A DNA stretch of 64,000 bases from Octopus sinensis (taxonomy: Eukaryota), in assembly GCF_006345805.1 (NCBI RefSeq), contig NC_043013.1, forward strand, positions 16,430,001 to 16,494,000, in the 5' to 3' direction. Below the pieces are notes generated by a model, which saw nothing but the letters and a program-made list of their open reading frames with translations, did not search any database and had not been told where the DNA came from. Below are positions 17,473-61,354 of the stretch, piece by piece (position 1 is the first letter of the stretch; each line of letters begins with the position of its first letter). The translations under genes and the position numbers were made by a program.

Positions 17473-18360
17473 ATGGAAGGCTATAAAAATGAAACTAATT
17501 CTACTCTCACTGCATCTCCTGAAATTAACTGGATAACTATAAGTGTTTGTATTGCGGCCATTGTAATAACCGTATTCAGTCTACTGTTATCGATAGCCAT
17601 TTTCCTAGATCGAAAAGCCTATGAGAAAACGCGCTCTTTCTTATTATTGAACTATATGTTTAATTACACACTGTTTGCCTTTCTATTTTACTTCCGCTAT
17701 GCACATGTGAAAATATTCACTGATTTACAAGCGTCTGGCTGCTATGCCATTTTTATACTATGTTCCGTTTTTGAAGACGGTGCTCTGTATTTCTTAATTC
17801 CTATTTGCTATGATTTTATTGTGAAATACACTAATCCAAGCAAACACGACAGTCAAAGTTTTCTGTGTCCCCAGATCATACTAACGGTAGTTTTGTGGGT
17901 TTTTATCTGGATAAAAGTATTAGTAATGATGTTAGCATACACATCCCACAAACTCAATCCATGTCAGATAGACTTAGATGCAAGTGCCCTCTATTTCCAT
18001 TTTGCCATAGTAATTTTGTATGTTATAGTATTACTAGTATATCTTGGTATGTTGATCAACATTTCAGTGAATAATAGAGGGAATGATGATACAATTGTAC
18101 CATTAAGAACAATAATCACTGTTGTTCTCGTCACGATGATACTATACGCTATTCACAACATTTTGTTTGCTGTAATGTATGGAGGGTTAATGGCTAAATT
18201 GTTTTACAGTGCCTTTTTAATATTTCTGATAAAATTTATAGTGGTACCGTTTTTGTGGCTTTCTGATCCCACTATAAAACAAAGTATTCGAACACTATGT
18301 TCAAGAAAATGTCAAAGTTCTGATGACTTCTCACCGAATGAGTTAACTAAACTAAACTAA
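17473..18360 (+). CDS. Divergent class A-like 7TM receptor, paralogue 1 (295 aa)
   Basis: Intact ORF with seven hydrophobic segments, N-terminal sequons (NET, NST), Cys at the top of TM3 (GCY) and in ECL2 (NPCQ), W in TM4, P in TM7 (VVPFLW), and a helix-8-like TIKQSIRTLC. DRY is replaced by DFIVKY. Splice acceptor tttcag ends at 17445. Confidence 0.9.
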   Translation: MEGYKNETNSTLTASPEINWITISVCIAAIVITVFSLLLSIAIFLDRKAYEKTRSFLLLNYMFNYTLFAFLFYFRYAHVKIFTDLQASGCYAIFILCSVFEDGALYFLIPICYDFIVKYTNPSKHDSQSFLCPQIILTVVLWVFIWIKVLVMMLAYTSHKLNPCQIDLDASALYFHFAIVILYVIVLLVYLGMLINISVNNRGNDDTIVPLRTIITVVLVTMILYAIHNILFAVMYGGLMAKLFYSAFLIFLIKFIVVPFLWLSDPTIKQSIRTLCSRKCQSSDDFSPNELTKLN

Positions 18361-18930
18361 TCACATAAAGTAATGTAAACATGTTTTATATCTGCTTACA
18401 TACAAATCTACATGCATTATATCAGCTTATACAATGATTTATATAATACTATTAAACATTATTCTTGTGTGTATAGCTTATAAATTAGCTTATATCGTAC
18501 ATTAATCGAAGTATAAATTACACATAGAGCTGTAATATAGGGCTATATGACATATGCATTTTTTTTACTGTAATAATACTAATAAAAATGTACATCACTA
18601 AGAGCTAGATGCAAGTGACAATTACAATTGCCAAAATAATGATGATGATAATAATATTAAAGATTTGGATGATGGTGATTATTATTATTAATATTAATAT
18701 TTTAAAGCGGTGAACTGGCTGTATCGTTAGTACGTCGTCGCGAAATGCTTTGCGGCATTTCGTCCAGGTTTACATTCTCAATTCAAGTTCCACCGAGGTT
18801 GACTGCCTTTCACCCTTACGGCGTTGATAAGAATAAGTACCAGTTGTACACTGGGGGGGGGGGGTCAATGTAATTGACTTACCTCTCTCCCGAACTTACT
18901 GGCCTCGAGCCAAAATTTGAAATCATTATT

Positions 18931-19700
18931 ATTTGGTTTGACTCGGGTACAGTTTTATTCCTGGTAGGATTTATGTGGGTAGCGACTACTACCTGTAACC
19001 TTAGGTATCCACAAGTTTTCAGTAGTCTTTCAAGTGCTTAGAACCCTTTTAATGATCCCCGAGTTACCTAAGAGACAAACTTTCTGTAGGAGCTCTACCG
19101 GGCATTCTATTCCACTCTCTTTCAGCCATTTGTCTATATCTTTGTTTACTGTTCCCAGCGCACCAATTATTATAGGCACAACCTTTACACTTCTCATACT
19201 CGAAATTCTTCCTATTTCAAATTTTAAGGGATTGTATTTTTTTGTTTTTTTTTTGTTTTGTTTTTTGTTCTCTTTCTTTACAATCCTGGAATCAAACGGG
19301 CATGATGGGTCGATTAGTAAGCATCTTTGCTTTTCCTTATTTTATTGTTGTGTCCGTCTATTATTTTCTAATTTCTTGTCCGTTTGAACAGGGAAGTCCC
19401 ACTAAAACTTACATCTCTCCGACTCCAATACTCTTTCTACTCAATGATTGTGCCATGTGGTTCCAGCTTCAAATCCCCATTTCTGGCAGAGTTTCTAGTG
19501 TATAGCTTTTACAACCTGGTCGTGCCTCCATTTCTTATATTCTTCCTGTGTCAACTTGGGACATTCTGCTACAATGTGTGCCACTGTCTCGTCCCAAATT
19601 CCACAGGCTATACATTTTTCAGGTACATTCTCTTCATATATATTTTTTCTGAAATTATTTGCTTTTATCGCTTGATCTTGGGCTGCTACAATTAAACTCT
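18931..19700 (-). mobile_element. R4/Dong-like LINE 3' fragment
   Basis: Minus strand gives C..CG..DETVAHIVAECPKL...RHDQV and VVPIIIGALGTV...LQKVCLLG. The 3' end runs into aataataat. Confidence 0.8.
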
Positions 19701-60300: not shown

Positions 60301-60439
60301 TTATTATTCCTTAGTATCTCTCTAAAATTATAGTTACAGCTACTAATATATAAAGAAAAAAATTAGCCTGTTGGTTTCATTATTTATCTTATTATCTCCA
60401 TTTCAGAATTGAGACAATTCAAAATACTCAAAACACAAG

Positions 60440-61354
60440 ATGGAAGATTTACAAGTGACTCTAGATTATAACTACGACTACGATTATACCCCAAAATTTT
60501 CAGTCTTCGGAGATAATATATTCGGGCGGTCGAATATAATTTTGTGTGTCTCGATCATTCTAGTTATCCTGACCAATGCATTTCTAATGATCGCCATTTT
60601 CCTAGATCGTAAATCTCACGGGAAAACGCGCTCTCTATCATTGCTGAACTATATGTTGAACTATGCATTGTTTACCTTGTTCGTTTATTTTCAGAATATA
60701 CATCTCCAGCTATTCCTATATTTCCCAACTTCAGCTTGTGCATTTATATTTATGACTCATAGTGTTCTAGATGAAGGGTCTAAATATTTCTTATTCCCTA
60801 TTTGCTGTGATTTTATCGTGAAATACTTTCAACCAAGCAAATATGGAAATCGGAAGTTTTTAATTATCCAGTACGCAGTGACAGGGATTTTGTGGGCCTT
60901 TCTCTGGGTAAAAGGATTGGTAATGTTTCTGGCATGTTCCGTTTTTAGTCCGGAGAGATGCAATATTAGTATAAATAGTAATTTCATAACAATCATGGCT
61001 ACATTCTCAATATTGATGATAACAATGCTAGTGTATATAGGCTTGTTGATCTATATTGCTATCAAAGGTAGACAATGTGAGATGATGAAATCGCCTTTAA
61101 GAACATTAATTATTGTTGTTATTTTGGCTTTCATTTCTTATCTTCAACAAAACTTATTTGAACTGGGAGTTTTTCCCTCATTCGATGATCAGACGTTCCT
61201 CATTTATCGTTACTCTCATTTTGTCAGCTTCCTGGTGATGTCGTTTTTGTGGATTCTTGATGCCACAATAAGACAAAGTGCACGGAAATTATGCTCAAAA
61301 AAATGTAAAGAATCTACAGATCACTCGTCACATGATATAACTGAACTAAACTAA
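60440..61354 (+). CDS. Divergent class A-like 7TM receptor, paralogue 4 (304 aa)
   Basis: Intact ORF with the same family motifs, closest to paralogue 3 ([24 protein letters not shown]). Acceptor ctccatttcag ends at 60406. Confidence 0.9.
   Translation: MEDLQVTLDYNYDYDYTPKFSVFGDNIFGRSNIILCVSIILVILTNAFLMIAIFLDRKSHGKTRSLSLLNYMLNYALFTLFVYFQNIHLQLFLYFPTSACAFIFMTHSVLDEGSKYFLFPICCDFIVKYFQPSKYGNRKFLIIQYAVTGILWAFLWVKGLVMFLACSVFSPERCNISINSNFITIMATFSILMITMLVYIGLLIYIAIKGRQCEMMKSPLRTLIIVVILAFISYLQQNLFELGVFPSFDDQTFLIYRYSHFVSFLVMSFLWILDATIRQSARKLCSKKCKESTDHSSHDITELN

What the first reader, a model, noticed from the sequence alone, without database searches (positions are those of the whole stretch)
17473..61354. 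Tandem cluster of four intact, highly divergent 7TM receptors with rewired class A motifs
Seen: four co-oriented intronless ORFs of about 300 aa, all intact although about 9-20 kb of decayed TEs separate them. Known: class A GPCRs carry LAxxD (TM2), DRY (TM3) and NPxxY (TM7). Here these positions are consistently LLNYM.NY, DFIVKY and (V/L/M)(P/S)FL(W/L), while the TM3/ECL2 cysteine pair, the TM4 Trp and helix 8 are retained. Intracellular loops are conserved and ECL2/TM5-TM7 are hypervariable. Inference: a lineage-specific, probably chemosensory, receptor family diversifying in ligand specificity while keeping its effector interface.
Basis: partly seen in the sequence, partly recalled or inferred. 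Interest (0 to 1): 0.75.

Follow-up and report, generated by a model that had tools for sequence, protein, structure and literature searches.

The report
Octopod-only rhodopsin-like receptor cluster, arginine switch lost
The four ORFs are real and belong to a 13-gene family of very divergent rhodopsin-like seven-helix receptors, named so far only from octopus relatives, whose outward-facing half varies fast while the inner face stays conserved but lacks the usual G-protein switch residues; where they are expressed could not be tested.

Summary
Confirmed and extended. The window is Octopus sinensis contig C17:16,430,001-16,494,000.

- **Extent.** The four ORFs are 4 of 12 intact, co-oriented copies spread over 140 kb. 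A thirteenth intact copy lies on C4 and looks like a retrocopy.
- **Family.** No copy hits Pfam, even at E<=10. The AlphaFold2 model is a clear class A GPCR fold (Z 25.4). Profile-profile comparison links the family (97% probability) to a sister group that does reach Pfam 7tm_1. One sister gene sits 23 kb upstream of the cluster and keeps DRC.
- **Motifs.** Position 3.50 is never Arg in 23 family members. D2.50 is N or S, N7.49 is hydrophobic, Y7.53 is W or L, and TM6 has no CWxP. Most copies keep N1.50; C3.25, the ECL2 Cys, W4.50 and P7.50 are kept.
- **Selection.** Pairwise identity is 0.54 in the cytoplasmic half and 0.28 in the extracellular half. dN/dS is about 0.35 versus 0.6-1.4.
- **Distribution.** An exhaustive search of 1.84 billion representative proteins found only 8 hits. 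The named ones come from Octopus and Argonauta.
- **Corrections.** The coding sequence is one exon, but a conserved splice acceptor upstream of each ATG implies a 5'UTR intron.

The parts
17473..18360 (+). Receptor copy R1 (295 aa), third gene of the C17 array
   Evidence: Intact ORF. Family profile E=9.5e-146. Motif states: S1.50, N2.50, C3.25, D-F-I at 3.49-3.51, W4.50, V-P at 7.49-7.50, W7.53.
17426..17472 (+). Splice acceptor (AG ends at 17445) and 27-nt non-coding leader of R1
   Evidence: Pyrimidine tract plus tttcag, conserved across the C17 paralogs. The leader carries an in-frame TGA, so the ATG at 17473 is the true start.
18451..18456 (+). ATTAAA, candidate poly(A) signal of R1, about 90 nt after the stop
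   Evidence: Nucleotide homology of the C4 copy to R1 ends just past this signal.
37612..38535 (+). Receptor copy R2 (307 aa), the copy that was modelled
   Evidence: Intact ORF. AlphaFold2 model: pLDDT 78, pTM 0.75, seven helices, an ECL2 hairpin and helix 8. Foldseek and VIA hits are all class A GPCRs. The O. bimaculoides counterpart P0002 is 80% identical.
37565..37611 (+). Splice acceptor (AG ends at 37584) and 27-nt leader of R2
46801..47703 (+). Receptor copy R3 (300 aa)
   Evidence: Intact ORF. Family profile E=5.8e-143. A counterpart from another dataset, P0008, is 78% identical.
46755..46800 (+). Splice acceptor (AG ends at 46774) and 26-nt leader of R3
60440..61354 (+). Receptor copy R4 (304 aa); the only copy with Ser instead of Pro at 7.50
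   Evidence: Intact ORF. Family profile E=1.7e-144. Motif table.
60387..60439 (+). Splice acceptor (AG ends at 60406) and 33-nt leader of R4
54400..55700 (.). Intergenic dispersed repeat containing the 229-aa ORF at 54721-55410; not part of the receptor genes
   Evidence: 4952 first-look candidates in the genome. The 40 scored copies are 70-76% identical. No Pfam hit.

Best explanation
These are functional members of a small, old subfamily of rhodopsin-like seven-helix receptors whose named members all come from octopods. The family grew by tandem duplication beside a more conventional orphan GPCR gene that still carries D-R-C in TM3.

Each gene has one coding exon preceded by a short spliced non-coding leader.

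The outward-facing half of the protein (ECL2, ECL3 and the outer turns of TM5, TM6 and TM7) forms a ligand pocket that differs from copy to copy and from species to species. The cytoplasmic face is held constant: ICL1 FLDRKxxxKTR, the end of TM3 with ICL2 [13 protein letters not shown], the TM5 end LIYIAxK, TM7 with helix 8 PFLWLxDATIRQSIRKL, and the extreme C-terminus ELTxELN. My reading is that many ligands feed into one shared intracellular partner.

The canonical activation switch is missing: Arg3.50, Asp2.50, CWxP/Pro6.50, Asn7.49 and Tyr7.53. Coupling must therefore work differently from textbook class A receptors.

The most likely job is detecting external or secreted chemical cues.

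*Shown:* the genes, the fold, the homology, the motif states and the selection gradient. *Inferred:* ligand binding, a shared partner and a sensory role.
For: - **Copy number.** Thirteen intact copies and no fragments in 210 kb.
- **Fold.** pLDDT 78, pTM 0.75, seven helices plus helix 8. The top-listed Foldseek and VIA rows are all class A GPCRs, best Z 25.4 at rmsd 2.6 A over 265 residues. The Atlas's own model gives TM 0.79 to TAARs.
- **Homology.** hhalign of the family against the sister group gives 97.0% probability, E=1e-10 over 260 columns, and 94.9% against P0017+P0021. P0017 scores 39.9 bits on Pfam 7tm_1, above the 30.5 cut-off.
- **Sister gene.** It lies at C17:16393380-16394264 on the minus strand, 23 kb from the array. 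It has DRC, CLVP in TM6 and LPFLLLFDANIIKSI.
- **Motifs.**
- **Disulfide.** The one copy that lost C3.25 also lost the ECL2 Cys, both to Tyr, which fits a real disulfide pair.
- **Selection.** Cytoplasmic versus extracellular identity is 0.54 versus 0.28, p=2e-17. dN/dS is 0.32-0.44 versus 0.61-1.43, and extracellular exceeds cytoplasmic in 6 of 8 close pairs by bootstrap. Cross-dataset pairs all lean the same way, 5 of 8 significantly; for example 0.89 versus 0.65 for L009 and P0011.
- **Age.** Counterpart pairs across octopus datasets, and Argonauta grouping with L012.
- **Outside N-terminus.** N-termini are short and acidic, and 9 of 13 carry N-glycosylation sequons.
Against: - **No expression evidence.** None of any kind could be obtained.
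- **No ligand or effector data.**
- **Weak direct sequence evidence.** No direct Pfam hit, and the best solved-structure sequence hit has E=0.3.
- **dN/dS above 1 not shown.** In the extracellular half the smallest bootstrap P is 0.06, so relaxed constraint there is not excluded.
- **Atypical for a chemoreceptor repertoire.** The family is small, has no pseudogenes and shows one-to-one counterparts across species.
- **Possible loss of signalling.** Losing Arg3.50 abolishes G-protein activation in many studied class A receptors (established knowledge, also stated in PMC2700072), so these may not signal conventionally at all.
Confidence: 0.5

Rival explanations
1. They are receptors for the animal's own fast-evolving peptides or proteins (reproductive, immune or tissue-signalling) and co-evolve with those ligands, rather than sensing the environment.
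For: - Seven of 13 copies have a one-to-one counterpart in another octopus dataset, with no pseudogenes and little sign of gene gain or loss. That fits paired ligand-receptor systems better than birth-and-death chemoreceptor arrays.
- N-termini are acidic. Several are rich in Tyr next to Asp or Glu (R2, R4, L008, L009, L010). This resembles the sulfotyrosine patches of chemokine and peptide receptors (my own knowledge).
- The published cephalopod-specific class A expansions are expressed largely outside the brain, including testes and gills (PMC6408891).
Against: - No candidate ligand genes were seen.
- The variable region is the helical pocket as much as the loops.
- No expression data.
Confidence: 0.2
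2. They are atypical, non-signalling seven-helix proteins: scavengers, decoys, or chaperones or co-receptors for another protein. They bind something but do not activate G proteins.
For: - Arg3.50 is absent in 23 of 23 members, replaced by F, V, Y, I or L.
- Asp2.50, the TM6 proline, Asn7.49 and Tyr7.53 are also replaced, while the neighbouring sister gene keeps D-R-C and C-x-x-P.
- Altered DRY motifs accompany loss of G-protein coupling in atypical chemokine receptors (my own knowledge).
Against: - The cytoplasmic face, including ICL2 and helix 8, is the most conserved part (identity 0.54-0.66, dN/dS about 0.35). That argues for a specific intracellular partner.
- A nearly invariant Lys at 3.53, one turn below 3.50, could supply a basic side chain. 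This is inference only.
Confidence: 0.2
3. The ORFs are non-functional relics or chance open frames sitting in repeat-rich DNA.
For: They lie among old transposon debris and have no Pfam hit.
Against: - Thirteen of 13 copies are open over about 300 codons in roughly 33% GC DNA.
- dN/dS is 0.32-0.44 in the cytoplasmic half.
- Related copies are kept in O. bimaculoides and Argonauta.
- The splice acceptor is conserved.
- The seven-helix model is confident.
Confidence: 0.03

Closest known systems
The neighbouring orphan GPCR gene (G000 C17:16393380-16394264, minus strand) and its relatives P0017 and P0021 (unnamed ENA and Logan proteins)
   Same: - Profile-profile homology from TM1 to helix 8 (97% probability).
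- Same ICL2 pattern, D-x-x-V-x-x-x-x-P-x-x-Y.
- Same TM7 and helix 8 signature, (L/P)P(F/L)(L/F)(L/W)L(F/L)D-x-x-I-x-K-S-I.
- W4.50 and the TM3/ECL2 Cys pair.
- Single coding exon with an acceptor at the ATG.
   Different: - The sister group keeps Arg3.50 (DRC, DRV, DRG) and a TM6 proline (CLVP, RFAP).
- It reaches Pfam 7tm_1 (39.9 bits for P0017, 23.3 bits for the O. sinensis gene).
- It is single-copy in O. sinensis and faces the opposite way.
Molluscan candidate chemosensory class A GPCR expansions (Aplysia AcCRa-c, PMC2700072; lophotrochozoan lineage-specific expansions, PMC11886862)
   Same: - Rhodopsin-like proteins with short N-termini.
- Mostly single coding exons.
- Same-orientation tandem arrays about 9-13 kb apart, with retrotransposons between the genes.
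- Extracellular segments are the most variable part.
   Different: - AcCRs keep the TM3 arginine (ERC). The lophotrochozoan expansions are reported to keep DRY and NPxxY, and in cephalopods and gastropods to lack the TM3-ECL2 disulfide.
- This family is the reverse: no Arg3.50, no NPxxY, disulfide pair kept.
- No sequence-level relationship was detected.
Cephalopod-specific class A expansions, groups 1 and 2 of Ritschard et al. 2019 (PMC6408891)
   Same: Cephalopod-restricted class A GPCR clusters with tandem arrangement and signs of positive selection.
   Different: - That survey collected GPCRs by Pfam signature. This family has no Pfam hit.
- The UniProt entry of one O. bimaculoides member (A0A0L8HPW6) is absent from the supplementary tables held here.
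- The family therefore appears to have been missed.
Nematode serpentine chemoreceptors (Srx, Srsx and similar) and rotifer orphan class A clusters
   Same: Nearest clusters by protein-language-model features (score 0.95-0.96). These are very divergent class A-like proteins of about 300 aa.
   Different: No alignment-based support. No Pfam Srx or Srsx match for the family at E<=10. This is a resemblance of style, not demonstrated kinship.
Octopus chemotactile receptors (nicotinic-receptor-like ion channels; cited in PMC11886862)
   Same: A cephalopod-restricted, tandemly expanded candidate sensory family.
   Different: An entirely different fold: pentameric ligand-gated channel versus seven-helix bundle.

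Membership tests
Rhodopsin-like (class A) GPCR superfamily | Seven-helix bundle with an amphipathic helix 8, matching solved class A structures | tested here: met
   Model pLDDT 78, pTM 0.75. The top-listed Foldseek rows (at least 500 matches at E<=0.001) are all class A. VIA Z 25.4, rmsd 2.6 A over 265 residues.
Rhodopsin-like (class A) GPCR superfamily | Significant sequence match to Pfam 7tm_1 (PF00001) or a related clan model | tested here: not met
   The four window copies give no relevant family at E<=10. Further members P0012-P0015 give none either. Only a transitive link exists: family to sister group at 97% by hhalign, and sister P0017 to 7tm_1 at 39.9 bits against a 30.5 cut-off. UniRef does name two O. 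bimaculoides members 'GPCR family 1 profile domain-containing'.
Rhodopsin-like (class A) GPCR superfamily | Asn1.50 in TM1 | tested here: met
   N in 9 of 13 O. sinensis copies, S in 3 and D in 1. Position fixed by the 5-HT1D alignment.
Rhodopsin-like (class A) GPCR superfamily | Asp2.50 (sodium and activation site) | tested here: not met
   N in 11 of 13 and S in 2 of 13. Assigned by the 28-residue spacing from 1.50.
Rhodopsin-like (class A) GPCR superfamily | Cys3.25-ECL2 Cys disulfide pair | tested here: met
   Both Cys are present in 12 of 13 copies. The exception, L010, has Tyr at both positions. ECL2 is modelled as a hairpin.
Rhodopsin-like (class A) GPCR superfamily | E/DRY with Arg3.50 | tested here: not met
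   D or E at 3.49 is kept, but 3.50 is F, V, Y, I or L in 23 of 23 family members. R is present only in the sister group.
Rhodopsin-like (class A) GPCR superfamily | Trp4.50 | tested here: met
   W in all 25 aligned sequences.
Rhodopsin-like (class A) GPCR superfamily | CWxP / Pro6.50 in TM6 | tested here: not met
   No conserved W or P in mid-TM6 of the family. TM6 is modelled as one continuous helix, residues 216-247. The sister group has CLVP or RFAP at the aligned place.
Rhodopsin-like (class A) GPCR superfamily | NPxxY in TM7 | tested here: not met
   Pro7.50 is kept in 12 of 13 copies, but 7.49 is L, V, M or I and 7.53 is W or L. The register is supported by a hydrophobic residue at 8.50, nine residues after the Pro.
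Rhodopsin-like (class A) GPCR superfamily | Ligand-dependent activation of heterotrimeric G proteins | not testable with these tools
   Needs cell-based assays.
Molluscan candidate chemosensory GPCR expansions (Aplysia AcCR type) | Single coding exon, same-orientation tandem clusters, lineage-restricted | tested here: met
   A 5'UTR intron is implied.
Molluscan candidate chemosensory GPCR expansions (Aplysia AcCR type) | Conserved arginine at the cytosolic end of TM3 (ERC or DRY) | tested here: not met
   compared with PMC2700072.
Molluscan candidate chemosensory GPCR expansions (Aplysia AcCR type) | Expression in chemosensory epithelia | not testable with these tools

The most novel reading that the evidence does not exclude
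This is a class A-derived receptor family that has given up the whole canonical G-protein switch (Arg3.50, Asp2.50, Pro6.50, NPxxY). It has replaced it with a new, strictly conserved cytoplasmic surface ([13 protein letters not shown], PFLWLxDATIRQSIRKL, C-terminal ELTxELN) that engages a non-G-protein partner. In this reading, neighbouring coding exons are alternative terminal exons spliced to shared leader exons, so that one cell picks one receptor from the array. NCBI labels different ORFs as 'isoforms' of a single locus, which hints at this.
Probability: 0.12. Interest if true: 0.8.

Novelty: new variant of a known kind. Interest (0 to 1): 0.5.

Why it matters
Cephalopod chemosensation is currently explained mainly by nicotinic-like chemotactile receptors. 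Cephalopods are also reported to have few lineage-specific class A GPCRs (PMC11886862).

This family is invisible to Pfam, and one of its O. bimaculoides members is absent from the held tables of the Pfam-based cephalopod GPCR catalogue. At least one octopod-specific receptor family has therefore probably gone uncounted.

It also offers a natural before-and-after comparison. A neighbouring gene keeps D-R-x and the TM6 proline, while 13 descendants replaced Arg3.50 with Phe and still hold their cytoplasmic face under purifying selection. That makes the question of how a rhodopsin-like receptor works without the arginine switch directly testable.

It remains a divergent branch of a very well known superfamily, and its biological role is unknown.

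Tried and rejected
- **Pfam scan.** The four copies and further members gave no 7TM family even at E<=10.
- **Profile search of PDB sequences.** Only 5-HT1D at E=0.3. Useful as an alignment, not as evidence.
- **Leader exon via the C4 copy.** The 120 nt upstream of the C4 copy turned out to be a dispersed repeat with 70 genomic hits. nhmmer and blastn against the 210-kb cluster region found only CA-microsatellite and repeat matches. No leader exon was identified.
- **Leader or promoter via upstream conservation.** Paralog homology extends only about 200-900 bp upstream. A GTAAGT about 70 nt before the acceptor in L008, L009 and L010, and a TATAAA-like block about 330 nt upstream, are suggestive. 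R3 lacks the GTAAGT, so I did not call them.
- **Intergenic ORFs.** Ten were scanned against Pfam with no hits at E<=0.01. Their repeat nature was shown by genome copy number instead.
- **Word search with P0017.** It found one unnamed relative only, so the organism stays unknown.
- **Literature.** No paper in the library names the NCBI or UniProt identifiers.
- The search of earlier findings, the look-up of encoding contigs and the look-up of sequencing runs, so read laying could not be used. No RNA evidence and no O. bimaculoides DNA for ortholog dN/dS could be obtained.
- **Not done.** Complex prediction was not used, because no binding claim is made.
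Full report
**1. Where we are.**
The word search identifies the source as Octopus sinensis. The window's own proteins sit on a 59.36-Mb contig. Their nearest named relatives are 'uncharacterized protein LOC115220941/LOC115220942' of O. sinensis and 'LOC106869328' of O. bimaculoides. The window is G000 C17:16,430,001-16,494,000.

**2.
- The four ORFs are at 17473-18360, 37612-38535, 46801-47703 and 60440-61354, all on the + strand, encoding 295-307 aa.
- They match each other at 36-51% identity, with E of 1e-52 to 1e-86.
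- Only six ORFs of at least 200 aa exist in all six frames of the window. Of the other two, one is a CT-rich tandem repeat and one lies in a dispersed repeat.
- The spacers are 19.3, 8.3 and 12.7 kb.
- Two sampled intergenic stretches have thousands of first-look matches genome-wide, with scored copies at 70-84% identity. That is old transposon debris.

**3. The cluster is larger than reported.**
- A profile of the four copies finds 13 intact copies in the genome.
- Twelve are co-oriented on C17 between 16,416,839 and 16,556,666, about 140 kb. One is on C4 at 60,781,011.
- tblastn over 210 kb around the array finds no fragments or pseudogenes.
- The maximum-likelihood tree follows genomic order: (L006, R1, R2 plus the C4 copy), (R3, (R4, L005), (L008, L009, L010)), L011, (L012, first copy). 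This is what tandem duplication produces.

**4. Gene structure.**
- The coding sequence is uninterrupted.
- Every C17 copy has a pyrimidine tract ending in CAG (TAG in the first copy) 4-33 nt upstream of its ATG. This is conserved while the sequence further upstream decays.
- In the four window copies the short leader contains an in-frame TGA. The ATG is therefore the true start, and the upstream exon or exons are non-coding.
- NCBI labels different ORFs of the array as 'isoform X2/X3/X4' of one locus. That would follow if they share leader exons. I could not verify this.
- The C4 copy is sister to R1. Its nucleotide homology to R1, R2 and L006 begins exactly at the first base after the acceptor and ends just past an ATTAAA about 95 nt after the stop. 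This is the footprint of a processed retrocopy.
- A relative carrying the same C-terminal extension exists in another dataset (P0005, 79% identity). The C4 copy is therefore old and has been kept intact.
- What lies upstream of the C4 copy is a dispersed repeat, not a leader exon.

**5. What the proteins are.**
- Pfam gives no relevant hit, even at E<=10. A family profile against all PDB sequences gives only 5-HT1D at E=0.3.
- The fold is nevertheless unambiguous.
  - With a 12-sequence alignment, AlphaFold2 gives pLDDT 78 and pTM 0.75. It shows seven helices, a two-strand ECL2 hairpin and helix 8.
  - The top-listed Foldseek rows (at least 500 matches at E<=0.001) are all class A GPCRs.
  - VIA-align gives Z 25.4, rmsd 2.6 A over 265 residues to CB2, with about 25 for the alpha1A adrenoceptor.
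  - The Atlas's independent model gives TM 0.79 to trace-amine receptors.
- Homology, not just fold, is supported transitively.
  - The exhaustive HMMER search returned one weak hit, P0017, at E=4.7e-5.
  - P0017 itself scores 39.9 bits on Pfam 7tm_1, above the 30.5 cut-off.
  - The O. sinensis genome has exactly one P0017-like gene. It is an intact 314-aa ORF on the opposite strand at C17:16,393,380-16,394,264, 23 kb upstream of the first array member. It matches 7tm_1 at E=5e-5, 23 bits, below the cut-off.
  - hhalign of the family against this sister group gives 97.0% probability, E=1e-10 over 260 columns from TM1 to helix 8. Against P0017 and P0021 alone it gives 94.9%.
  - In a tree the neighbour groups with P0017 and P0021 at support 1.0, outside the family.

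**6. Motif states.** These rest. The register was checked by the spacings 1.50 to 2.50 = 28 residues, C3.25 to 3.49 = 24, and P7.50 to 8.50 = 9.

| Position | State in the family |
|---|---|
| 1.50 | N in 9 of 13 O. sinensis copies |
| 2.50 | N (11) or S (2), never D |
| C3.25 and ECL2 Cys | both kept in 12 of 13; L010 has Tyr at both, a paired loss that fits a real disulfide |
| 3.49 | D or E, kept |
| 3.50 | F, V, Y, I or L in 23 of 23 members across species |
| 3.51 | Ile, invariant |
| 3.53 | Lys in 11 of 13 |
| 3.57 | Pro, invariant |
| 4.50 | Trp, invariant |
| TM6 | no conserved Trp or Pro |
| 7.49 | L, V, M or I |
| 7.50 | Pro in 12 of 13 (Ser in R4) |
| 7.53 | W (11) or L (2) |
| after TM7 | invariant Asp, then helix 8 |

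The sister group has DRC, DRV or DRG and a TM6 proline (CLVP, RFAP). It already has xPxxW/L followed by LxD. The TM7 change therefore predates the family, while the losses of Arg3.50 and Pro6.50 are specific to it.

**7. Selection.**
- Across the 13 paralogs, mean pairwise identity is 0.54 in the cytoplasmic half (inner helix halves, ICLs, helix 8). It is 0.28 in the extracellular half (Mann-Whitney p=2e-17).
- The extremes are the cytoplasmic end of TM3 at 0.66 and ICL1 at 0.63, against ECL3 at 0.13, outer TM6 at 0.15, outer TM7 at 0.18, outer TM5 at 0.19 and ECL2 at 0.22.
- dS between the closest paralogs is 0.23-0.45, so it is not saturated.
- By Nei-Gojobori, dN/dS is 0.32-0.44 in the cytoplasmic half and 0.61-1.43 in the extracellular half. 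Extracellular exceeds cytoplasmic in 6 of 8 pairs by codon bootstrap.
- dN/dS above 1 is not significant in any pair; the best P is 0.06.
- The post-hoc 'hypervariable' subset reaches 1.3-2.3 in the L008/L009/L010 trio. That subset was chosen by its variability, so I do not lean on it.
- Cross-dataset pairs all lean the same way, 5 of 8 significantly. For example L009 and its O. bimaculoides counterpart are 0.89 identical in the cytoplasmic half and 0.65 in the extracellular half, p=3e-6.

**8. Distribution.**
- HMMER with the family profile against 1.84 billion 50%-identity representatives found 8 proteins at E<=0.001.
- Named members come from O. bimaculoides and Argonauta hians. The others are unnamed Logan or ENA sequences.
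- Seven of the 13 O. sinensis copies have a one-to-one counterpart at 71-88% identity, three of them in O. bimaculoides. Argonauta copies group with L012. Much of the duplication is therefore old within octopods.
- P0015 is sister to all octopod copies, has Leu at 3.50 and has no close counterpart in O. sinensis. It probably comes from a more distant taxon that I could not identify.
- 'Octopod-restricted' is therefore the present state of the data, not a proven limit. Only predicted proteins were searchable, not other cephalopod genomes.

**9. Literature.**
- The main cephalopod GPCR survey collected receptors by Pfam signature (PMC6408891).
- The UniProt entry of one O. bimaculoides family member is absent from its held supplementary tables, although hundreds of sibling identifiers are present. 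Stored files may be truncated.
- The lophotrochozoan survey reports that lineage-specific expansions retain DRY and NPxxY. It also reports that cephalopod ones lack the TM3-ECL2 disulfide (PMC11886862). That is the opposite of this family.
- Aplysia candidate chemoreceptors keep the TM3 arginine as ERC (PMC2700072).
- No paper in the library names these loci.

**10. Interpretation.**
- *Shown.* This is a real, conserved family of rhodopsin-like seven-helix proteins whose named members are all octopod. Its outer pocket is variable. Its inner face is constrained but non-canonical. It sits next to a more conventional sister gene.
- *Inferred.* The variable pocket binds different ligands, the conserved inner face contacts one shared partner, and activation does not use the Arg3.50/NPxxY switch.
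- *Role.* Chemosensation is the most likely role but is untested. Three features keep an endogenous-ligand role and a non-signalling role open: the small and stable gene number, the absence of pseudogenes, and the acidic Tyr-rich N-termini of several copies.
- *Unexplained.* The near-invariant C-terminal ending ELTxELN (ELTTEIE in Argonauta). It does not fit the usual PDZ-ligand pattern as I know it.

**11. Limits.**
- There is therefore no RNA evidence, no leader exon and no ortholog dN/dS.
Residue-level contacts, such as the Cys-Cys distance and the exact TM5 register of the conserved Tyr207, were not checked.

Noticed in passing
outside the window: G000 C17:16393380-16394264, minus strand (L038:1501-2442:-): A single intact 314-aa orphan GPCR gene lies 23 kb upstream of the array, in the opposite orientation. 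It keeps DRC in TM3 and CLVP in TM6 but already has the family's TM7 and helix 8 signature. It is probably close to the progenitor type.
   Followed up: yes
outside the window: G000 C4:60781011-60781925 (L007:1489-2400:+): The thirteenth copy lies on another chromosome. Its homology to the array copies starts at the first base after the splice acceptor and ends at the poly(A) signal, which is a processed-retrocopy footprint. It is intact, has a C-terminal extension, and has a relative with the same extension in another dataset (P0005).
   Followed up: partly
outside the window: G000 C17:16529287-16530201 (L010): This copy has Tyr in place of both C3.25 and the ECL2 Cys, and Ser at 2.50. It is the only member that has lost the disulfide pair, and it lost both partners together.
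   Followed up: partly
window 61331-61354, 47680-47703, 38512-38535 and 18337-18360 (the C-terminal codons): The extreme C-terminus, (H/N)EL(T)x(E/K)(L/I)N followed by the stop, is conserved in 10 of 13 paralogs. It is recognisable in Argonauta and in the deep member P0015. Its function is unknown.
   Followed up: no
window 60440-60520 and 37612-37690 (N-terminal codons), and loci L008-L010: Several copies have N-termini made of alternating Tyr and Asp/Glu (for example DYNYDYDY and YEYELEHEYEY). These resemble sulfotyrosine patches of peptide and chemokine receptors.
   Followed up: no
window 11899-12537, minus strand: A 212-aa 'ORF' that is a translated 14-bp CT-rich tandem repeat (11930-12201, 19.5 copies). 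It is an artefact, not a gene.
   Followed up: partly
window 3941-4360: A tandem repeat of a 183-bp unit, 2.3 copies at 90% match. It starts in the highest-GC 2-kb bin of the window (2001-4000, 0.47).
   Followed up: no
window 54721-55410, plus strand: A 229-aa ORF with a YxDD-like box (YTDDV) lies inside a dispersed repeat that has thousands of first-look matches genome-wide. It is probably a decayed reverse-transcriptase remnant, although Pfam gave no hit.
   Followed up: partly
L008, L009 and L010, about 70-100 nt upstream of the ATG: A conserved GTAAGT about 70 nt before the acceptor, and a TATAAA-like block about 330 nt upstream. These could be a private mini-leader and promoter. The GTAAGT is absent from R3.
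   Followed up: partly
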